A stretch of DNA of 63,948 nt, the filler included, from Octopus bimaculoides (taxonomy: Eukaryota): assembly GCF_001194135.2 (NCBI RefSeq). It is 8 parts of 7 records of this genome, joined end to end, with 100 filler letters (N's around TTAATTAATTAA, not from the genome) between each part and the next. Parts side by side here need not be neighbours in the genome. Positions count along the whole stretch, not along the records: positions 1 to 26,561 come from NC_069000.1; 7 more parts are not named here. One strand, written 5' to 3'. The notes under the pieces were generated by a model that made no database searches, was not told where the DNA came from, and was given only the letters and a program-made list of their open reading frames with translations. Each line of letters opens with the position of its first letter. The first letter of the stretch is position 1. Both the position numbers and the translations under genes were made by a program. Shown here in pieces: positions 6,661-22,743 of this stretch.

Positions 6661-8941
6661 CAGTATGAACCGGAAAAGTTGTAACATGGGTTGTTTTGCT
6701 TTCTAATAAGTGAGAATTTGTCAGAAAGCCTCCAGGAAAGCGAAGCAACACACATTACATGACAAAAACAGTGAAGTTTGGAGGTAAGAGTCTGATGCCT
6801 TTGGGATAGTTGGTTAAAATTGATGGTAACTTGAATAGTACCAATTATTAGGTTGTTTCACATAAAATGTCGCATTTTTAATTGCTTGTTATTTCAGTCA
6901 TTTATTTAAAAACTCAACTATGTCTACCTTGCATTTAATCTTGACTCTTTTTCTTTCCCAACAATACTGGTATACAAAATTTGTACCCACAGAAAATGAT
7001 AACAAGCAAACTATGTTGAGTGATTTTCTCGTATGAGTACAAACTGGGTCACTCTGCTGCAGAAGCTCTACGAAATATCAAGTAGGACTTTGGTAATGGT
7101 TTTGTTGACATCAGAACTGTTCAGAGATGGTTCCAAAGCTCTTGTTTAGGAGATGATAACCTTGAAAATAAACCAAGGGGTAGGCTAAAACCAGTTATTT
7201 GGCATGATGGATTAAATGCTTTGGTTGAAGAAAATCCAAGAACAAAGGTTCGAAGACTTTCATCAGAACTCCAAACATCTCGCACAACTGTTTTTGGACA
7301 CCTGTAAAAAATTGGAAAAGTCAAGAAAACGGATAGGTTTGTTCCACATCAACTGAACAAGATAAAAAAAAAACAGATACCTCGACATGTGCTCCTTATT
7401 GCTTTCTCGACTGGAAAAAGACCATTTTTGCATCAAATCATTACTTGTGATGAAAAATGGATACTCTTTGACAACAGCAGGTGAACAGGACAGTGATTAG
7501 ATACAGGAGTGTCACCTAAACACTACCCAAACCCACCATTGCACCCTAAAATGTTAGTGGTCACTGTATGGTGGTCTGTAAAGGGAGTTATTCATTATTC
7601 ATTTTTGCAACAAGGAAAAACGGTAACAGCAACATTGTATTGCCAGGAAATTGATTGTATGCATGAGAATTTGAAAAAGAAGCAACCCAGACTAGTGAAT
7701 AGAGATAGCCCAATTTTGCTCCACGACAATGCAAAGTCCTCACACTCCTCAAGCTGTGGTCCAAAAGTTGCAAAGTCTGAATTATGAGATTTTGCAACAT
7801 CTTCCCTATTCCCCTGATATCTCTCCTACTGATCATCACTTATTTAAGCATTTTTAGCTTTTCATAAGCAATGAAACATTCTTAAATAGAGAAGAGGTAA
7901 TTGAAGCATTCAGACAGTTTATCACAGCAAAAAATGAATTTTTTTTAAAGATGGAATATATGACATTGGGCAAACATCATAAATGAACATGGATCATACT
8001 TTGATTAAATAAATCAGTTCTCTAACACTTCTGAAACATTTTATTGTTACCTTTCAAATATGACATTCCATGTGAAACAACTTAATATATCCAATGCTGA
8101 AGGACAATTTGATACCAGACATGGATGAAGGTGAGATTTTCCAGTATGACAGAGCTCCATGCCACAGATCGTGTGCAACACAATAGAGTCTGGCTGATGA
8201 AGGTGTTACCGTATTTGATCAGCTCAGAGCCCTGACTTAAATATCATCAAGTAAATATGGACAGAACTAAAGACAAGAGTTTGTCAGAAGAATCCACATA
8301 ATCTAGAAGAGTTGTGGGAACTCAACAGCAGAGAATGACATCTCATACCTGTGAAGATGGTGATAGATTTGTATGCATCTCTTCCCAGGTGCATTGAAAT
8401 AGCTTGTTGTGTGAGGGAACTGTAATGCTGGGAAATAAGAATCAATTCACCTACCTTCTTGTCGTTTTGCTGTCCAGCTCAAATGAAAACTTGCACCCAG
8501 CCCCCACATCCATCGATAGCAGCAACTAGTACCTGTCCCTATCAGTTTGCTTGTCACGTCTGTTCGTCATGAGCATGCAAAGCAAAAGAGGATGACCATG
8601 GTCTTCTTTCCTTTACTTCCTCTATCACCCTTCCTGTTCCAGTCAAGCCCCTTGTCCGTTGAGGTCACAACCCTTTCCTTCCAACTCATCTCATCTCCAC
8701 AAACTTGACTGGTTTATGTAAGGTGGCTGAAAACTTTTGCACGGCCATTTTTGGTGGTCGTCTCGCATTTTCCTCTCTCATTCAGAACCCATACTACAAA
8801 ATATAAGGATTAGGTATGGAAATGACTCTAACAGGGTCAATGTTTCATCTGTAAAAAACGCAATGCAAAACATCCACTTATAAGTTGGAAATTAGTAGAA
8901 ATTTACAACAGTTCAAAGTGGAAGACTTTTCCGCGGTACTG
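6661..8941 (+). mobile_element. Degenerate, 5'-deleted Tc1-like element split by a nested mariner
   Basis: KTVKFGGKSLM..LVKIDGNLNSTNY before 6847 continues after 8087 as ..MLKDNLIPDMDEGEIFQYDRAPCH..SPDLNII..WTELKTRVCQKNPHNLEELWE. Right end ACTTTTCCGCGGTACTG; the left end match is only partial. Confidence 0.7.
6848..8085 (+). mobile_element. Full-length (1238 bp) mariner, Hsmar1/cecropia-like, inactive transposase
   Basis: TIRs TTAGGTTGTTTCACATAAAATGTCGCATTT / AAATATGACATTCCATGTGAAACAACTTAA with TA on both sides. Broken ORF 6996-8008 has TCDEKWILFDN, TVWWSVKGVIHY, LLHDNAK and PYSPDISPTD. Confidence 0.92.
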
Positions 8942-10516: not shown

Positions 10517-12011
10517 CACCCAGAACCACACTAATAGCTTAGGGGTGAAATTTAGGATTTCTTGGTTTTCTGTGAATCAATTTTGATAAAACTTTTCCCA
10601 GCTAGTTTGCACACCATGGCAACACTTGTTATGTTTTCATTATTCTGTTGAACGTCCTTTCTTTTTTATTTCAAATTCTTCAGTTTTTGGGTGAACCACA
10701 CTAATAGCTTTTGAATGAAAATAGCCCATCTAGACATTTTTTTTTTCAGAAAATGAAGTGTAGATACATATTAAGCATACATTGAGTTTTAACAGAAAAC
10801 CATAATATTATAACATTTATTGACAATGAATTATTTAGCCACATGAGTGCCAAGGAAGAAACAATCCAATTGTGGAACCTCCAAGACTGGGACAGCTAGG
10901 GATTTAAGGAATATTGGCCACAAATTACATGGGAAACCTGGACAATCAAGCCAAGCCATTTTCATCATCTCCAGACTTCCTCATGTACTGAAAACCACCA
11001 GAAATCGCATCCTCAGAACCATGGTTTCCATGTGAGAACCCTTGAAACTGCCTCCTCACAGGAGTTTGAGGCTTTAATAGGCCAAAAAGTACATGATGTT
11101 AGACTTGTGTTCTGTTCACTGATGAAACCAGGGCAACCCTTGATGAACCTGATGGTTGGGCAAATGCTTGAGTTTATTTTGGAGATGAGCATCACCAATA
11201 TTTATGATGTCAACAACAGGGTGGAGGAGTCATGTTGTGGGCTGTTATGATTGGGGACAGAATTGTTGGCCCAGTCAGGTACCTGAAGAGGTTAAAGTGA
11301 CCACAGTCGCCTACTGCAATCTCCTGAAGGAGGTCTTGGATCCCTGGATAGATGACATACTGCTGTCACTCGTATTCATGCATATCAATGCTCCCTCCCA
11401 CTCTGTTAGGACCACCCAAACATTCCTAGGGTCTTACAGCATACAAGGTGAAAGGTTGATGGTGTGGCTACTAGCATCTCCAGATCTCAACCCTATCAAA
11501 AGTCTTTGATCCATCATTAAACAAGATATTTATGCTGATGGACATCAATTTATGTCAAAAGCTGTCTTATGGGCAACCATCAAAGCTGCAACAGAGGTAG
11601 TCCAACCTGCTACTATTAAGAAATTGACAGATTCCATGACTAATAGGAAGTTAACTGTCAAAATGGCGCTCATGTGGCTAAATAATTCATTATGTCAATA
11701 GATGTTATAATATTATTATGGTTTTTGTTGAATATATACTCAATGTATGCTTAATATGTATCATTACCCTTCATTTTCTGAAAAATAATGTCTAGATGGG
11801 CTATTTTCATTCAAAAGCTATTAATGTGGTTCACTCAAAAACTGAAGAATCTGAAATAAAAAAGAAAGGATGTTACACAGAATAATGAAAACATAACAAT
11901 GGTATTGCCATAGTGCACAAACCAGCTGGGAAAAGTTTTATCAAAATCAATTCACAGAAAACCTGAGAAATCCTAAATATCACTCCAAAGCTATTAGCAT
12001 GGTTCTGGGTG
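10517..12011 (+). mobile_element. Tc1-like element (1495 bp) with ~335-bp IR/DR-type inverted repeats and a decayed transposase
   Basis: 10517-10852 is the inverted copy of ~11665-12011, each with an internal direct repeat GAACCACACTAATAGCTT. Coding remnants FTDETRATLDEPDGW, GGGVMLWA, FMHINAPSH and SPDLNPIKSL. Confidence 0.88.
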
Positions 12012-13816: not shown

Positions 13817-14438
13817 TGTACACAAGTCTCAAATATAGATCTTTACAGCATCTGTGCTCCTTTATATAAAGTTCTTGTCCTTTCCTTTTTCTTCTAATAA
13901 TGTTTTCNNNNNNNNNNNNNNNNNNNNNNNNNNNNNNNNNNNNNNNNNNNNNNNNNNNNNNNNNNNNNNNNNNNNNNNNNNNNNNNNNNNNNNNNNNNNN
14001 NNNNNNNNNNNNNNNNNNNNNNNNNNNNNNNNNNNNNNNNNNNNNNNNNNNNNNNNNNNNNNNNNNNNNNNNNNNNNNNNNNNNNNNNNNNNNNNNNNNN
14101 NNNNNNNNNNNNNNNNNNNNNNNNNNNNNNNNNNNNNNNNNNNNNNNNNNNNNNNNNNNNNNNNNNNNNNNNNNNNNNNNNNNNNNNNNNNNNNNNNNNN
14201 NNNNNNNNNNNNNNNNNNNNNNNNNNNNNNNNNNNNNNNNNNNNNNNNNNNNNNNNNNNNNNNNNNNNNNNNNNNNNNNNNNNNNNNNNNNNNNNNNNNN
14301 NNNNNNNNNNNNNNNNNNNNNNNNNNNNNNNNNNNNNNNNNNNNNNNNNNNNNNNNNNNNNNNNNNNNNNNNNNNNNNNNNNNNNNNNNNNNNNNNNNNN
14401 NNNNNNNNNNNNNNNNNNNNNNNNNNNNNNNNNNNNNN

Positions 14439-14490
<52 letters not shown>

Positions 14491-18405: not shown

Positions 18406-21400
18406 CTATAGTGTATCTTGATTAAGTTCTGAAATCAATTGGTCAGTTCTGTTAAAATCCTCTTTCACCTTCCACTCAATACTTTCTTCATCTAGCTTTT
18501 CTTCTTTACTACCTTCCTTACTTTCCTCTTCAGCTACTTCTCCTGTTCCCTGTTTCTCTACTTCTGCCCTTACCTCTTTTATCATTGTTTTTTCTTTCTC
18601 CTCTTCTATTAATCTACTTTTTCCTTTTTGGCCATTATCTTTTTTTGAACCAGCACTGACCCCATCTACTTCCATTTCCACCTCCTCTTTATTTGCATTC
18701 TCTTTGTTCAATTTATTTGATTCTGAGTCAATACATGTTTCTTCTTCTCTTTCCCCTTTTGTATTTTTTTCATCCTTTGCTTCCCTTACAATCTCATCAT
18801 CTTCCTTTTCTAGTATTACAAGTGCTTGTTTTTCCACTTCCTCCAAAAGTCTTTCTTCCAAATTACCCACTTCTTTCTCAGATTTTTCTGCTGCACTGTC
18901 TGTTTTTGTCTTCACCTTGCTGTCATTTTTTTCCTCAGATTTTTCTGTTTTGACACAAGATCCAGCTTCAAACATTACACATTGCAATTCGCCACACTCT
19001 GTCATGTGTTGGATGGGATTTGTGGTAGATACTAAGATATTGCGGCAAAACACACACTGGTTCTTTAGGTTGCTTACATGTGATACCAAATGCACTACAA
19101 GTTTGCGGAAGTCTTCAAACACAGAACTGCAATAATAGCAGATGCAAAACCCTGTTTCCAAATGAGATTTAAGGTGAAATATATAGTTATAGAGATAACG
19201 GACTTTTACTGAACAATATTTGCAAGTGAAGTTCTCATCTTCGTATTGTTCAGAAACTGATTTACTTGCCTGTAGTGTTGTACGTTTAGCCTCATCAATG
19301 TCTTCAAAATCAATGGAACTAAGATCAACAGTAATTATCGCTTTCGTAGATGGTGGTCGGGTTAGTGGATTTAATGCCGGAACTTTAGAAGCTGTAAGTG
19401 AGCTGTCTCCAACTTGATAATTGTCAGAAACATTCCCAGTTCTTGTTGAAGAATGTGACATCTGGGATGTTTCAGAATTTGTTATTGTTAAGGGTTCTTT
19501 GTTGGATGTTTGGAAGTTGGCTTCAATCTCAGCACTACTCAGTGAACGGATATCTACGAGAGTAATGCCAGAGACAGAAGATTTGTCACCGACTTCATCA
19601 ACAGGCCTGCTTACAGTTTCAGTTACTTCCTCCGATGGTTTTAAAGATCTGATGTCAACGAGAGTAATGTCTGACAATGATGAACTACTTTCATTGGCTA
19701 CAGCAGCAGACTGAACATTTAGGCTGTTGTTTCTAGTGGAGTTAGATGACGCCCAGAGATTGCTGTTCAAATTGATTGTACTTGTGTTTGGAATACGATT
19801 CTGATTTGTATTAAATGCTCTGATGTTATTGTTGGAAAGATCAAATTCTACAACAGATGCCTGATTATTCAACACTGGAGGCCTTCCAGAGCTGTCATGT
19901 GATTCCAAGTCTACAATATCAACAACATTTTTGGAAGTCGACTTACTACTAGACAAGCTGGTACCATTCTCGTAACTGATAATGTTGATGTCAGGATTGG
20001 TTAAATCAAACTGAACAACATCAGTTGATCCTGAAGGTACATTCGAAGTTTTCTCTTCCTCAGCTACAAGATCTATAACAGGGATGTTGTTAGGAGTAGC
20101 TAGCATCTTCCTTTGGCGATTCAGTCGTGAGATTAGCATGGCATTTGGATTGTTTAAAGTAGATACTCCTGGGTTGACGTTTACAGCACGTTTCTGATGA
20201 CTTCGGTTTCTTACAATCTGTACAGGGTAACTATTGCTGCTAGTTGGAGTACCAGTCATACTATTTTCTCTTGGACTTATGTCTTTACGAACCAGTGAAC
20301 TAAGAGGGACATTGCTGTTTGCATAAATCTGAACTGGACGAACCTCTTGGTTAACAATATTACTATTGTTGGCAGCTTGCTGCTGGTTCAAAGTGCCAAG
20401 ATTGACACTAGTAAGATCACAATTAAGGGTATTCACTGGGTGACTAGTAGGGTTTTGTAAGACTTGGTTGCTCTTTTGCTGGTATACTATTGTGTTGCGT
20501 TTGTTCCAGTCATTCAAATTATTTGCTCTAAGACCAGAGTTGAGTGTATTCTGCACCTGTTTTGGGATCTGATTTAAATTTATCCGATTAATTCGACTAT
20601 TATTGCTTGGTGGCATTTTGTTTCGTTCCATGGCACCCAAATTAACAACAGACAGATCACAGTTCAAAGTATTTGATGTTTGACCCACTGTTGGTGCACC
20701 AACATCAGTTAATCTTTCTACTTGACGTATACGCCGGTTTCTTCTGAGGAAATTTATATCTGCTGTAGTGAGATCAAAATTCACGGCACTTCTCACTCGG
20801 TTTGAGGGGAGATTATTTTGAGAAACAGAGTTTCTTGATCTTGATACAAGCAAGTTGTTGCTAGGTCTGTAGTTACGGTTCAATGAACTGATATTAGAAA
20901 TTGTCAGGTCACAATTAACTGTACTGTTTGATTTGCTACCATTGGAGAACTGTGATGTCACATTTGGTGCAGCAGCCCCTGATCGCTGACTGATTGTAGC
21001 AAGATCAGAACGAGTTAAATCGCAATTAACAACATTTCTTTGACTCTGTTGATTTAAAGGATTGGAATAAAGACTGTTAGTGGAATAACGCTGATTTGGA
21101 ATTGGCTGTTGTGCTAACTGCTTTCTTTGACTGTACCTAAAATTTGAAGGCTGTTGCATTCTTACTATGTTTCTGTTGTTGCCATTTTCAGGCATCAAAT
21201 AGATTCGATCAGTAATATTTCTACCGGAGGGATTGTGTGTAGAGTTCTGGCGTGTAGATGAACTTTGAACCTGAATTTGATTTTGTAACAGGGAATTCTG
21301 GGAGTTCTTCTGAGATGCCAACTGTTGAGACAAAAGAGAAATAGCAGCTGCTTTTGACAGTTGATTTGCACTGGGCTGTCGATTCTGAGGTGTTGTGGAA

Positions 21401-22119
21401 TTAGATAAGTTTTGAAATCGAAATGGTCGCTTCAGTGAACTGACCCCAGTGACTATGACATCATTATCACTGTTACTGGGGCGTTTTTGAGCCAATCTCA
21501 CAGTTTGGTTTGTGTTCAGGGAGTTGATGTCTCTGGATGTTAGATCACAGTTAACAGTTGTGTCATTTGATGCAAGTCTCATCGCATTTTGGAGAGAAAC
21601 TTGATTCGGCAACAAATTCCTCTTGTTTTTGTTCATTGACCTCAAATCTGTAGAACGTAAATCACAGTTCAAAGTGTTTGCATTGTTAATGCCAGGAGCT
21701 ACACTAATTAAGGGCACATTCGATGAGTTGCCTCGACTGGACTGGTTGCTGGCCAACAGATTGGCAATAGTTCGTGGTTGCCGGAAATTACTAAGATTGT
21801 CTTTCTGTGCCTGTGTCACACCAATACCTAAGTGAGCATCTTTGTGTTTGTTTAAAGTAGCCAAATTATTAAATGTCATCTTGCAAAGTGGACACTGCAG
21901 CTCTTTGTTGACATTGTGAGTCAGCATGTGGACGGATAAATAGTGTTTGTTTTGAAACAATTTATGACAAATATTACATTCTGACTCTCTCTCTTGAGAG
22001 TGAACATTTCTCATATGCCTCTCCAGGTGTACAGGACGAGAAAATGTCATTTGACAGTGCTCACATGTATAAAGCTTTCCTGGTTGAGCACTAGCATCTT
22101 CAATATGAGTTGCACCCAT
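18406..22119 (-). CDS. C2H2 zinc-finger protein (~1237 aa): 3 N-terminal C2H2, long N/Q/S-rich region with a repeated DLT motif, 2 C2H2 + 1 C2HC, acidic/Lys-rich C-terminus
   Basis: Uninterrupted 3.7-kb ORF in repeat-rich DNA. Six C-x2-C-x12-H-x3/4-[HC] units at ~22072-21832 and ~19233-18990. The first ATG (22119) has context AAAATGG; the track's start at 22185 is a GTG, with an in-frame TAA at 22206-22204. Confidence 0.95.
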   Translation of the reverse strand: MGATHIEDASAQPGKLYTCEHCQMTFSRPVHLERHMRNVHSQERESECNICHKLFQNKHYLSVHMLTHNVNKELQCPLCKMTFNNLATLNKHKDAHLGIGVTQAQKDNLSNFRQPRTIANLLASNQSSRGNSSNVPLISVAPGINNANTLNCDLRSTDLRSMNKNKRNLLPNQVSLQNAMRLASNDTTVNCDLTSRDINSLNTNQTVRLAQKRPSNSDNDVIVTGVSSLKRPFRFQNLSNSTTPQNRQPSANQLSKAAAISLLSQQLASQKNSQNSLLQNQIQVQSSSTRQNSTHNPSGRNITDRIYLMPENGNNRNIVRMQQPSNFRYSQRKQLAQQPIPNQRYSTNSLYSNPLNQQSQRNVVNCDLTRSDLATISQRSGAAAPNVTSQFSNGSKSNSTVNCDLTISNISSLNRNYRPSNNLLVSRSRNSVSQNNLPSNRVRSAVNFDLTTADINFLRRNRRIRQVERLTDVGAPTVGQTSNTLNCDLSVVNLGAMERNKMPPSNNSRINRINLNQIPKQVQNTLNSGLRANNLNDWNKRNTIVYQQKSNQVLQNPTSHPVNTLNCDLTSVNLGTLNQQQAANNSNIVNQEVRPVQIYANSNVPLSSLVRKDISPRENSMTGTPTSSNSYPVQIVRNRSHQKRAVNVNPGVSTLNNPNAMLISRLNRQRKMLATPNNIPVIDLVAEEEKTSNVPSGSTDVVQFDLTNPDINIISYENGTSLSSSKSTSKNVVDIVDLESHDSSGRPPVLNNQASVVEFDLSNNNIRAFNTNQNRIPNTSTINLNSNLWASSNSTRNNSLNVQSAAVANESSSSLSDITLVDIRSLKPSEEVTETVSRPVDEVGDKSSVSGITLVDIRSLSSAEIEANFQTSNKEPLTITNSETSQMSHSSTRTGNVSDNYQVGDSSLTASKVPALNPLTRPPSTKAIITVDLSSIDFEDIDEAKRTTLQASKSVSEQYEDENFTCKYCSVKVRYLYNYIFHLKSHLETGFCICYYCSSVFEDFRKLVVHLVSHVSNLKNQCVFCRNILVSTTNPIQHMTECGELQCVMFEAGSCVKTEKSEEKNDSKVKTKTDSAAEKSEKEVGNLEERLLEEVEKQALVILEKEDDEIVREAKDEKNTKGEREEETCIDSESNKLNKENANKEEVEMEVDGVSAGSKKDNGQKGKSRLIEEEKEKTMIKEVRAEVEKQGTGEVAEEESKEGSKEEKLDEESIEWKVKEDFNRTDQLISELNQDTL

Positions 22120-22743
22120 TTTTTGACAATTTTTTTTTTTGTTTTGTAAAGTTTTAGTAAGCAATAATTTTTCAGTTCCAAACACTAAATTAGCAGATTC
22201 TAGTTATCTATTGGTCAATTTAGTGTTTCAAAAAGGATAAATTTTTTATTACTTATATGTAATAAATGAATATTGATTTTATGGAGGCAATCATTACCAT
22301 AATTATCATAATTATTAACACTTATTATTGTTTTTTGCTGTGGTTCTGTTGATTACATTTGTTAATTGTTATATTTGTGAAGTGTCAACACAAACCTATG
22401 TTCCTTAGCAACATGGTCCGAGTTGAGTCATTCTCTTGGATTGTAGCTCATTACTCATTTTGTATGGTTGTCAGTTAAGTCACTCTCAAATTCCATTTCA
22501 ACAAAGACCAATGTATTACTAAGATATTTGTAGACATTCATTTGCACAGCTTCTCCGGCAACAAATATCTTCAATTCTGTTGCACTTGCATGCAACAACT
22601 ACACATTATGCAATACCATCATTGGCAGGTTGTGTTTTGATTGAGTCAGGGAAGTCATTGTATCTTTTCGACCATCTTCTATCACAGTCAACTGAACATT
22701 GGTCCAGAGTGAACAGTTGATAGAACACGGTAATAGCTCACAT

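What the first reader, a model, noticed from the sequence alone, without database searches (positions are those of the whole stretch)
19292..21678. About 12 dispersed copies of an unrecognised D-L-T-x-x-D-I-x-x-L motif in the middle of the zinc-finger protein
Seen: the low-complexity linker repeats LNCDLRSTDLRSM (~21660), VNCDLTSRDINSL (~21545), VNCDLTRSDLATI (~21020), VNCDLTISNISSL (~20910), VNFDLTTADINFL (~20775), LNCDLSVVNLGAM (~20655), LNCDLTSVNLGTL (~20415), VQFDLTNPDINII (~20005) and VEFDLSNNNIRAF (~19840). Degenerate copies are SDITLVDIRSL (~19660), SGITLVDIRSL (~19555) and TVDLSSIDFEDI (~19315). Spacers are unrelated in sequence and length. The conserved Leu after Asp uses TTA, CTA, TTA, CTG, CTC, CTG and CTT in the first seven copies, pointing to conservation at protein rather than DNA level. 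Known: the hydrophobic-D-L-T core resembles type-b SUMO-interacting motifs ([VI][VI]DLT, as in RNF4 and RNF111) and, less well, CtBP PxDLS. Inference: a multivalent docking array (short strand plus amphipathic turn/helix) on a disordered scaffold, for example a poly-SUMO reader or corepressor hub tethered by zinc fingers. I do not know this extended motif from any described family.
Basis: partly seen in the sequence, partly recalled or inferred. Interest (0 to 1): 0.85.

Follow-up and report, generated by a model that had tools for sequence, protein, structure and literature searches.

The report
Repeated docking motif in octopus protein
An uncharacterised zinc-finger protein, found so far only in cephalopods, carries thirteen conserved copies of an apparently undescribed ~18-residue peptide motif along a disordered middle region; they are most likely repeated docking sites for an unknown partner, and the proposed SUMO link fits the sequence poorly and remains untested.

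Summary
One intron-free ORF (window 18406-22119, minus strand, 1237 aa) has 3 C2H2 fingers, an ~860-aa N/S/Q-rich region, 3 more fingers and an acidic tail. No strict match occurred in 20,000 shuffles. There is no DNA-level repeat and synonymous codons differ between copies.

The motifs are conserved blocks in Argonauta and in a more distant homologue: dN/dS 0.056 against 0.22 in the spacers, and 74% against 38% amino-acid identity. AlphaFold2 gives a disordered scaffold and, for the unit, an extended VNCDL followed by a Thr-capped helix. Central copies lie ~40 aa apart in all three homologues, which suggests an old tandem duplication.

A motif-profile scan of 1.84 billion representative proteins found the array only in this family. 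Pfam, PDB and literature searches found nothing.

The SUMO reading is not supported for the core copies. None matches the type-a, type-b, type-r or CoREST-type SIM patterns, and their flanks are basic. Canonical-looking acidic SIMs do occur further downstream in the same region. None of the 13 copies has the proline that a CtBP PxDLS site needs.

Best reading: a multivalent fold-upon-binding docking array whose partner is unknown.

The parts
18406..22119 (-). Single-exon CDS of the host protein (1237 aa plus stop). ATG at 22119 (MGATH...); the mechanical ORF runs up to 22185.
   Evidence: ORF. (P0001 is 100% identical, 1237 aa). (cluster includes uncharacterised proteins of Octopus vulgaris and O. 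sinensis). (the Argonauta CDS is also one uninterrupted 3987-nt ORF).
21832..22071 (-). Three canonical N-terminal C2H2 zinc fingers.
   Evidence: Pfam zf-C2H2 E=1.6e-10 with 3 stretches. AF2 beta-beta-alpha elements at residues 17-96. dN/dS 0.021.
19237..21822 (-). About 860-aa N/S/Q-rich middle region, predicted disordered, that carries the motif array.
   Evidence: Composition S 14.7%, N 14.6%, Q 7%. AF2 pLDDT 24-37 throughout. Spacer dN/dS 0.22.
21634..21672 (-). Copy 1, LNCDLRSTDLRSM (strict).
   Evidence: HMM domain 36.9 bits.
21517..21555 (-). Copy 2, VNCDLTSRDINSL (strict).
   Evidence: AF2 unit model: helix SRDINSLNT directly after the Thr.
20992..21030 (-). Copy 3, VNCDLTRSDLATI (strict).
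20881..20919 (-). Copy 4, VNCDLTISNISSL (strict). STVNCDLTISNISSLN is invariant in all three homologues.
20746..20784 (-). Copy 5, VNFDLTTADINFL (strict, Phe variant).
   Evidence: AF2 helix at residues 452-460.
20629..20667 (-). Copy 6, LNCDLSVVNLGAM (strict).
20506..20544 (-). Copy 7, LNSGLRANNLNDW. Degenerate in Octopus and Argonauta, perfect (VNCDLTTNNLNDW) in P0003.
   Evidence: (34.4 bits).
20389..20427 (-). Copy 8, LNCDLTSVNLGTL (strict). Degenerate (PNSNLSSVNLSNL) in P0003.
19978..20016 (-). Copy 9, VQFDLTNPDINII (strict, Phe variant).
19813..19851 (-). Copy 10, VEFDLSNNNIRAF (strict, Phe variant).
19642..19680 (-). Copy 11, SLSDITLVDIRSL. Degenerate. Contains LVDI, which matches the ELM-style SIM pattern; the flank is acidic.
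19540..19578 (-). Copy 12, SVSGITLVDIRSL. SGITLVDIRSLS and the following E-I-x-A-N-F-Q are invariant in all three homologues.
19297..19335 (-). Copy 13, ITVDLSSIDFEDI. Degenerate, with an acidic stretch.
20053..20079 (-). VIDLVAEEE, a canonical-looking SIM core with an acidic tail. Not a copy of the motif. NIPVIDL is invariant in all three homologues.
   Evidence: VIDL matches [IV][IV]x[IVL].
19900..19926 (-). VVDIVDLES, a second canonical-looking SIM core with an acidic or Ser-rich tail.
   Evidence: (ELM-style parallel SIM match NVVDIVD).
18994..19230 (-). Three atypical C-terminal C2H2 fingers.
   Evidence: PDB sequence search: best match CTCF fingers, E=6.9e-8. AF2 strands and helices at residues 971-1041. 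Conserved in Argonauta and in L001.

Best explanation
The copies are an array of short, fold-upon-binding docking sites on an intrinsically disordered linker between two zinc-finger clusters of a nuclear, presumably DNA-binding, protein known so far only from cephalopods. Each unit is about 18-20 residues: [ST]-[VL]-N-[CF]-D-L-[TS]-x-x-[DN]-[IL]-x-x-[LMIF]-N-[KR]-N.

Inferred mechanism. The alternating V-x-C/F-x-L segment binds as an extended strand. The following T/S-x-x-D/N-[IL] acts as a helix N-capping box, with a hydrophobic staple between the Leu before the cap and the Ile/Leu after it. This starts a two-turn amphipathic helix that places I/L(+6) and L/M(+9) on one face. Thirteen such sites, six or seven of them about 40 residues apart, would recruit several copies of one partner, or an oligomeric partner, with high avidity to wherever the fingers bind.

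The array most likely arose by tandem duplication of a ~40-aa unit before the three lineages split. The spacers then drifted while the docking sites were held.

The partner is not identified. SUMO is the most plausible named candidate (treated as a rival below), but it is not indicated for the core copies.

Shown: the copies, their significance, purifying selection, predicted disorder, the local strand-helix prediction, and restriction to this family. Inferred: binding, multivalency, nuclear role and duplication origin.
For: Copies and significance: (13 HMM domains, all in the gene's frame and none elsewhere in the window).

Purifying selection on the motif. Against Argonauta the 13-aa cores have dN/dS 0.056 and 90% aa identity; the spacers have 0.219 and 65% (Fisher p=1e-11). 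Against P0003 identity is 74% versus 38% (p=5e-16).. The motif value is close to that of the zinc fingers (0.021).

Each copy is individually old. Orthologous copies share 51-74% identity even at the 'variable' positions, against 14% between copies within one protein.

Disorder: AF2 of residues 1-1200 gives pLDDT 24-37 across the middle region, with no contacts that build a domain.

Local structure: AF2 of one 40-aa unit, using the 37 copies as the alignment, gives pLDDT 88 over VNCDLTSRDI and a helix SRDINSLNT that starts right after the Thr. Short helices appear directly after DLT in four copies of the full-length model.

Informative columns are -4 to +2, +5, +6 and +9, with weaker signal at +10 to +14.

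Regular ~40-aa spacing is kept in all three homologues.
Against: No partner or binding has been shown; everything about function is inferred from sequence.

The AF2 models rest on a 3-sequence alignment, or on paralogous copies used as an alignment, so both 'disorder' and 'strand-helix' are weak predictions.

Only three divergent homologues (plus near-identical Octopus sequences) were available, so the conservation statistics come from few lineages. dS between Octopus and Argonauta (about 1.1) is near saturation.

Conservation of a hydrophobic motif in an N/Q-rich region could equally serve self-association.
Confidence: 0.6

Rival explanations
1. Poly-SUMO reader. The copies are non-canonical SIMs that add a beta-strand to SUMO's groove, possibly switched on by CK2-type phosphorylation of the T/S in T-x-x-D. 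Together with the canonical SIMs downstream they would read poly- or multi-SUMOylated chromatin proteins.
For: The same disordered region holds canonical-looking SIM cores with acidic tails: VIDLVAEEE, VVDIVDLES, LVDIRSLSSAEIE and IITVDLSSIDFEDIDE. NIPVIDL and SGITLVDIRSL are invariant in all three homologues. The degenerate copies 11-13 both belong to the motif family and match ELM-style SIM patterns. The D-L-T tripeptide is shared with type-b SIMs (PMC4086084). A 2025 review calls the SIM a 'loose' motif, lists Cys among preferred core residues and notes extended SIMs (PMC12751080). The alternating h-x-h-acid-h pattern (10 hits against 0.64 expected) recalls the CoREST-type SIM [IVL][DE][IVL][DE][IVL]. 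T-x-x-D fits the CK2 consensus S/T-x-x-D/E (textbook knowledge).
Against: There are no matches to the type-a, type-b, type-r or CoREST-type SIM patterns. Most core copies have only 2 hydrophobic residues in any 4-residue window, whereas 3 or more is typical. The position before C/F is always polar (N/Q/E), where type-b SIMs need a hydrophobic residue. Downstream flanks of copies 1-8 are neutral to basic (0 to +5; positive in seven), whereas SIMs use acidic or phosphorylated flanks to meet SUMO's Lys39/Lys46. ELM-style SIM matches in the region are not enriched over shuffles (5 against 3.4, and 3 against 2.2). The conserved second half (D/N-I/L-x-x-L, a predicted helix) has no counterpart in described SIMs.
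Confidence: 0.25
2. Homotypic 'stickers'. The hydrophobic motifs are self-associating elements spaced along an N/Q/S-rich, prion-like spacer, and they drive condensate or higher-order assembly of the protein rather than binding a separate partner.
For: N+S+Q make up 36% of the region. The hydrophobic motifs recur at a regular ~40-aa spacing between fast-evolving, indel-tolerant spacers. The region is predicted disordered.
Against: The conserved polar positions (N-2, D0, T+2, D/N+5) and the copy-specific conservation of 'variable' residues look like stereospecific recognition rather than generic stickiness. AF2 showed no inter-copy contacts (weak evidence). Aromatic stickers typical of prion-like domains are rare here.
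Confidence: 0.1
3. A folded repeat domain. The ~40-aa units pack into a solenoid (LRR-like or other) and the 'spacers' are long loops.
For: The period is regular at ~40 aa. There is a superficial likeness to the LRR core LxxLxLxxNxL: weak PDB sequence matches of VVEFDLSNNNI and VDIVDLESHDSSG to a plant LRR receptor (E=2.9), and a BspA-type LRR protein appeared among the weak profile hits.
Against: The register differs from the LRR core by one residue at both ends: hydrophobic at LRR position 2 rather than 1, and D/N at position 10 rather than 9 (read from the column table). Pfam gives no repeat-family hit. pLDDT is 24-37 with no tertiary structure. The spacers take 12-aa and longer indels between homologues and are low-complexity. 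Gaps of 137-175 aa interrupt the array.
Confidence: 0.03
4. CtBP-type corepressor hub, with copies acting as PxDLS-like sites as in ZEB1/2.
For: Most copies contain D-L-[ST], and the host is a zinc-finger protein, as many CtBP recruiters are (textbook knowledge).
Against: The defining Pro two residues before the Asp (PxDLS position 1, column -3 of this motif) is absent from all 13 copies; that column holds V, L, S or I. The conserved C/F(-1), D/N(+5), I/L(+6) and L(+9) have no role in PxDLS binding.
Confidence: 0.02

Closest known systems
Type-b SUMO-interacting motif, [PILVM][ILVM]-D-L-T (Vogt and Hofmann classes, as quoted in PMC4086084; PIAS- and RNF4-type SIMs)
   Same: Shares the D-L-T tripeptide. 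Lies in a disordered region, is likely to bind as a strand, and occurs in multiple copies in a nuclear protein.
   Different: The two residues before D-L-T are [NQE][CF], not two aliphatic residues, so there are 0 of 13 matches. Flanks are basic. There is an extra conserved half (x-x-[DN]-[IL]-x-x-[LM]-N) predicted to be a capped helix.
CoREST1-type SUMO-2-selective SIM, [IVL][DE][IVL][DE][IVL] (Ouyang et al. 2009, as quoted in PMC4086084)
   Same: Hydrophobic and polar residues alternate over five positions: V-N-C-D-L and V-E-F-D-L against I/V/L-acid-I/V/L-acid-I/V/L.
   Different: The first polar position is N/Q rather than an acid in 8 of the 9 strict copies. The central residue is C/F, which lies outside the pattern. 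There are 0 strict matches.
Multi-SIM readers and ligases (RNF4, RNF111/Arkadia, ZNF451, SLX4)
   Same: Several binding motifs sit on one disordered stretch. The host also has canonical-looking acidic SIMs (VIDLVAEEE, VVDIVDLES).
   Different: Those proteins cluster 2-4 SIMs within tens of residues, whereas this one has 13 units over about 800 residues at ~40-aa spacing. There is no RING domain. The Pfam ZNF451 C-terminal finger model scores 13.2 bits against a cut-off of 30, so there is no evidence of homology.
CtBP-binding PxDLS arrays of ZEB, Kruppel and Knirps-type repressors
   Same: A repeated D-L-S/T-containing peptide lies between zinc-finger clusters of a transcription-factor-like protein.
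   Different: No Pro is present. The motif is three to four times longer and has different conserved positions.
Leucine-rich repeat core LxxLxLxxNxL
   Same: Similar residue types (L, N, D, S/T). One copy (VVEFDLSNNNI) fits by coincidence.
   Different: The register is off by one residue at both ends. The period is about 40 aa with low-complexity, indel-tolerant spacers. The region is predicted disordered and has no Pfam LRR hit.

Membership tests
Type-b SIM | Sequence [PILVM][ILVM]-D-L-T | tested here: not met
   0 matches in the middle region. All core copies have [NQE][CF] before D-L-[TS]. The definition was read in PMC4086084.
Canonical SIM (any orientation) | A four-residue core with at least three V/I/L(/C)-type hydrophobic residues | tested here: not met
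   Most core copies have 2 of 4 (N-C-D-L or T-V-N-C). Only VVNC (copy 3), VVQF (copy 9) and VVEF (copy 10) reach 3 of 4 if C/F are counted (columns). The criterion is from PMC12751080. It is met by the separate downstream sites VIDL, VVDI/IVDL, LVDI and IITV.
Canonical SIM (any orientation) | An acidic or phosphorylatable stretch flanking the core | tested here: not met
   The net charge of the 12 residues downstream of copies 1-8 is 0 to +5, and upstream 0 to +2. The feature is met only for copies 11-13 and for VIDLVAEEE and VVDIVDLES. Ser/Thr are present, so phospho-dependence cannot be excluded.
Canonical SIM (any orientation) | Direct binding to the SUMO beta2/alpha1 groove | not testable with these tools
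   Structure jobs accept only sequences from this window or its homologues, so co-folding with SUMO was not possible. No experiment was possible.
CoREST-type SIM | [IVL][DE][IVL][DE][IVL] | tested here: not met
   0 strict matches. The relaxed h-x-[IVLCF]-[DE]-h pattern gives 10 hits against 0.64 expected.
CtBP PxDLS motif | Pro at the first position of P-x-D-L-S | tested here: not met
   The first PxDLS position corresponds to column -3 of this motif (two residues before the Asp), which holds V, L, S or I in the 13 copies and never P.
Leucine-rich repeat | LxxLxLxxNxL core in contiguous 20-30-residue units that form a solenoid | tested here: not met
   The register differs. There is no Pfam LRR hit. 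The period is about 40 aa with indels. AF2 pLDDT is 24-37.
ZNF451-like SUMO E3 / multi-SIM zinc-finger proteins | Sequence homology to ZNF451 (tandem-SIM N-terminus plus ZNF451-type fingers) | tested here: not met
   PF23107 scores E=0.14 and 13.2 bits against a cut-off of 30. No ZNF451 appears among the hits.
Multivalent short-linear-motif array on a disordered region (generic class) | Short conserved islands within a fast-evolving, disordered, indel-tolerant sequence | tested here: met
Multivalent short-linear-motif array on a disordered region (generic class) | A demonstrated binding partner | not testable with these tools
   No interaction data exist. No paper mentions the protein accessions or the peptide strings.

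The most novel reading that the evidence does not exclude
The motif is a previously undescribed class of docking peptide (strand plus Thr-capped helix followed by a basic N-[KR]-N patch). It would have evolved within coleoid cephalopods and would recruit a partner other than SUMO or CtBP in many copies, for example a chromatin co-regulator. In effect it would be a lineage-specific, repeat-built effector module of a C2H2 protein, playing the role that KRAB or ZAD play in other lineages.
Probability: 0.35. Interest if true: 0.6.

Novelty: new variant of a known kind. Interest (0 to 1): 0.45.

Why it matters
Coleoid cephalopods have an unusual C2H2 zinc-finger repertoire, but almost nothing is known about how these proteins recruit effectors. 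Here a single-copy, intron-free and strongly constrained gene, known so far only from cephalopods, carries 13 individually conserved copies of a peptide that matches no known domain or linear-motif class. That gives a well-defined handle: a 20-residue peptide with obvious mutant controls for fishing out a cephalopod nuclear partner. It also offers a natural test case for how multivalent motif arrays arise by tandem duplication and then persist while their spacers decay. If the partner were SUMO, the SIM definition would have to widen to cores with two polar positions and basic flanks. If it is something else, this is a new motif-domain pair.

Tried and rejected
1. Word-indexed search of 5.8 billion proteins with the motif profile. 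The second returned 23 candidates and no hit, and did not even recover the query's own protein, although the same profile scores it at 316 bits locally. I treat this search as uninformative, not as a negative result.

2. Word-indexed searches with the whole protein and with the middle region alone. They found only the three family clusters; every other hit was a generic C2H2 finger match such as Sal-like, ZNF142 or ZEB2-like.

3. Metagenome contig scan. It returned four generic zinc-finger loci with no motif copies.

4. PDB sequence searches of the C-terminal fingers and of the SIM-rich segment. They gave only generic fingers (CTCF) and noise.

5. LRR reading: rejected on register, disorder and indels.

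6. CtBP reading: rejected because no copy has the Pro.

7. FHA-domain ligand (pT-x-x-D): considered because of T(+2)-x-x-D(+5). It is unlikely, because the Thr is replaced by Ser or Arg in 5 of 13 copies and the Asp by Asn in 5 of 13.

8. Classical NES, PP1 RVxF, LIR, eh1, HP1 PxVxL and LxCxE patterns were compared by eye with the column table. None fits the conserved positions.

9. Identifying the organism behind SRR27666071, and literature on the protein accessions or the peptide strings: nothing found.

10. tRNA and Rfam scans of the window: nothing found.

Full report
**What is there**

The finding lies inside one long ORF on the minus strand, window 18406-22185. The annotated product starts at the ATG at 22119 and is 1237 aa (P0001, 100% identical). 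Its 90%-identity cluster contains proteins of Octopus vulgaris (CAI9737619.1) and O. sinensis (XP_029647460.1). Both are named only 'putative uncharacterized protein DDB_G0282133' or 'C2H2-type domain-containing protein'. The CDS is a single exon here and in Argonauta hians (locus L002 1001-4987).

Pfam sees only C2H2 fingers: three canonical ones at the N-terminus and weaker signals near residues 965-1012. The PDB sequence search of the C-terminal block hits generic fingers, best CTCF at E=6.9e-8. An ~860-aa region with S 14.7%, N 14.6% and Q 7% lies between the finger clusters. An acidic tail follows the second cluster.

**Check of the observation**

All nine core copies and the three degenerate copies are at the stated places. 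A thirteenth copy was missed: LNSGLRANNLNDW at 20506-20544. It is degenerate in Octopus and Argonauta but is a perfect VNCDLTTNNLNDW in the distant homologue. Conversely, copy 8 is perfect in Octopus and degenerate in that homologue.

- The strict pattern occurs 9 times, against 0 in 20,000 shuffles of the region.
- The loose pattern occurs 13 times, against a mean of 0.11 and a maximum of 3.
- A profile built from the copies finds 13 domains, all in the gene's reading frame and none anywhere else in the window's six frames.
- The same profile finds none in 38 unrelated zinc-finger proteins.

There is no DNA repeat behind this. Tandem Repeats Finder finds nothing in the region, and the direct-repeat scan finds only 14-38-nt patches at 60-95% identity. 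Copies that share an amino acid share the codon only 44% of the time.

The informative columns are -4 to +2, +5, +6 and +9, with weaker signal at +10 to +14. The unit is therefore about 18-20 residues: [ST]-[VL]-N-[CF]-D-L-[TS]-x-x-[DN]-[IL]-x-x-[LMIF]-N-[KR]-N.

The spacers are unrelated in sequence but not in length. Gaps between successive copies are 39, 175, 37, 45, 39, 41, 39, 137, 55, 57, 34 and 81 aa. Six of the 12 fall in 37-45 aa (P about 7.5e-4, for a range chosen after seeing the data). The same ~40-aa rhythm is kept in Argonauta and in the distant homologue.

**Conservation**

Only two other homologue clusters exist in the 5.8-billion-protein collection. One is Argonauta hians (P0002, 69% identity). 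The other is P0003 (47% identity), from a Logan assembly of run SRR27666071, whose organism I could not identify.

In the three-way alignment the motif copies stand out as invariant islands while the spacers change and take indels. Nei-Gojobori estimates on the codon alignment, window against Argonauta:

| Region | dN/dS | aa identity |
|---|---|---|
| 13-aa motif cores | 0.056 | 90% |
| Rest of the middle region | 0.219 | 65% |
| N-terminal fingers | 0.021 | 93% |

dS is about 1.1 in both the motif and spacer classes. Against P0003, identity is 74% in the motifs and 38% in the spacers. The Fisher tests give p=1e-11 and p=5e-16.

Each copy is also individually old. At the positions that vary between copies, orthologous copies are 51% (P0003) to 74% (Argonauta) identical. 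Different copies within one protein are only 14% identical at those positions.

**Structure**

AlphaFold2 on residues 1-1200 with the three-sequence alignment gives mean pLDDT 30.6. Only the fingers and one C-terminal helix (1081-1117) are structured. The whole middle region has pLDDT 24-37. The only secondary structure there is five short helices. Four of them lie directly after the DLT (or DLS) of copies 2, 3, 5 and 13, and the fifth (862-865) follows copy 12.

I then used the 37 copies from the three homologues as an alignment for one 40-residue unit. This gives pLDDT 88 over VNCDLTSRDI and a helix SRDINSLNT that begins right after the Thr.

This fits what the sequence suggests from textbook helix-capping rules. 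T/S-x-x-D/N is a capping box. The Leu before the cap and the Ile/Leu at N4 form a hydrophobic staple. Both predictions are weak because the alignments are shallow. They speak against a folded repeat domain.

**Is it known elsewhere?**

A full HMMER scan of 1.84 billion representative proteins with the motif profile returned six proteins at E<=0.001. Two are this family; Argonauta falls within the window protein's 50% cluster. The other four are prokaryote-type proteins with unrelated tandem repeats: SGITxTNISNWNTAYGWGNH units and a BspA-like LRR. These are not homologues.

- Pfam has no model for the region.
- A PDB sequence search of the SIM-rich segment gives only noise.
- The peptide strings and the protein accessions occur in no searchable paper.
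- A 2025 survey of cephalopod C2H2 expansions does not mention SUMO or any effector motif.

Within these limits the array is confined to this cephalopod family and is undescribed. One limit is that squid, cuttlefish and Nautilus proteomes may be poorly represented in the collection.

**The SUMO and CtBP interpretation**

I took the SIM definitions from the GPS-SUMO paper (PMC4086084) and from a 2025 review (PMC12751080).

- Type a, type b ([PILVM][ILVM]DLT), type r and the CoREST-type [IVL][DE][IVL][DE][IVL] each have zero matches in the region.
- ELM-style parallel and antiparallel SIM patterns match 5 and 3 times. This is no more than in shuffles (3.4 and 2.2). Apart from one antiparallel match inside copy 6 (DLSVVN), these lie in the C-terminal third of the region (residues 731-927), in or next to copies 11-13 and in VVDIVDLES.
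- The core copies share D-L-T with type-b SIMs, but a polar N/Q/E sits where a hydrophobic residue is required. Most have only two hydrophobic residues in any four, whereas three is typical.
- The downstream flanks of copies 1-8 are neutral to net basic (0 to +5). SIMs use acidic or phosphorylated flanks.

Some points favour a SUMO link. The same region carries canonical-looking acidic SIMs: VIDLVAEEE, VVDIVDLES, LVDIRSLSSAEIE and IITVDLSSIDFEDIDE. Several of these are invariant. The review lists Cys among core residues and stresses that SIMs are loose and can be extended. The alternating h-x-h-acid-h pattern (10 hits against 0.64 expected) recalls the CoREST type. T-x-x-D is a CK2 consensus that could add charge.

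I therefore keep SUMO as the leading named candidate, at about 0.25, but it is not the best explanation for the core array. CtBP is rejected because no copy has the defining proline. LRR is rejected on register, disorder and indels.

**Most likely mechanism**

The array is a multivalent set of fold-upon-binding docking sites, each an extended strand followed by a capped amphipathic helix. It sits on a disordered tether between two finger clusters and recruits several copies of a partner, or an oligomeric partner, to the protein's DNA targets. It was built by tandem duplication of a ~40-aa unit before the three lineages diverged. Since then selection has maintained the sites, and partly their spacing, while the spacers drifted.

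- Shown: the copies, their significance, selection, predicted disorder, local structure propensity and family restriction.
- Inferred: binding, multivalency, nuclear role and origin.
- Rivals: non-canonical SIM array (0.25), self-associating stickers (0.1), folded solenoid (0.03), CtBP hub (0.02).

**Verdict**

The feature is real, statistically solid and under selection. It is apparently undescribed, and it sits in an orphan protein known so far only from cephalopods. It belongs to a known general kind, the multivalent linear-motif array, and is a new variant of it. It is moderately interesting and gives a clean experimental handle, but there is no functional evidence yet.

Noticed in passing
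L001 2778-2780 (homologue contig from SRR27666071): The distant homologue's ORF is interrupted by a single in-frame TAG (…ANFQDDSEKS*TKVSS…). The same frame then runs on for more than 450 codons into the conserved VAVDL copy and the three C-terminal fingers. This could be a sequencing or assembly error, a polymorphism, or a stop that is recoded. Cephalopods edit A to I extensively, and UAG to UGG would restore Trp. It remains unexplained.
   Followed up: partly
window 21400-21500, 21190-21220, 21090-21130, 20320-20350 and 20100-20140, approximately (minus strand; P0001 residues 212-236, 300-308, 332-345, 593-601, 664-674): The disordered region has other conserved islands that are not copies of the motif: KRPSNSDNDVIVTGVSSLKRPFRFQ (two KRP boxes, NLS-like, around a VIVTG stretch), RNVTDRIYL, RKQLAQ..PNQRY, VRPVQIYAN and SRLNRQRKxLA. 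They appear as invariant columns. Their function is unknown.
   Followed up: no
window 18409-18456 (minus strand; the last 16 residues) and about 18770-18880 (P0001 residues 1081-1117): The acidic tail is poorly conserved (46% identity with Argonauta), except for its very end, FNRTDQLISELNQD[TS]L, and a helix VGNLEERLLEEVEKQA. Both are conserved in Argonauta, and the latter is predicted helical. They may be further docking elements.
   Followed up: no
window 7509-7787 (+): Fragment of a mariner-type transposase (Pfam Transposase_1, E=1.2e-19). By eye, the ORF at 11204-11509 looks like another transposase remnant, but it had no Pfam hit at E<=0.01.
   Followed up: partly
window about 13900-14450: An assembly gap (run of N) flanked by TA/TG-type microsatellites, which translate as YIYIYI and CVCVCV. 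GC drops to 0.19 in this kilobase.
   Followed up: no
P0042-P0044: Prokaryote or phage-type proteins with tandem ~42-aa repeats SGITGTNISNWNTAYGWGNHA[SG]AGYLTSYTETDPVF came up as weak hits of the motif profile. The likeness to SGITLVDIRSL looks coincidental.
   Followed up: no
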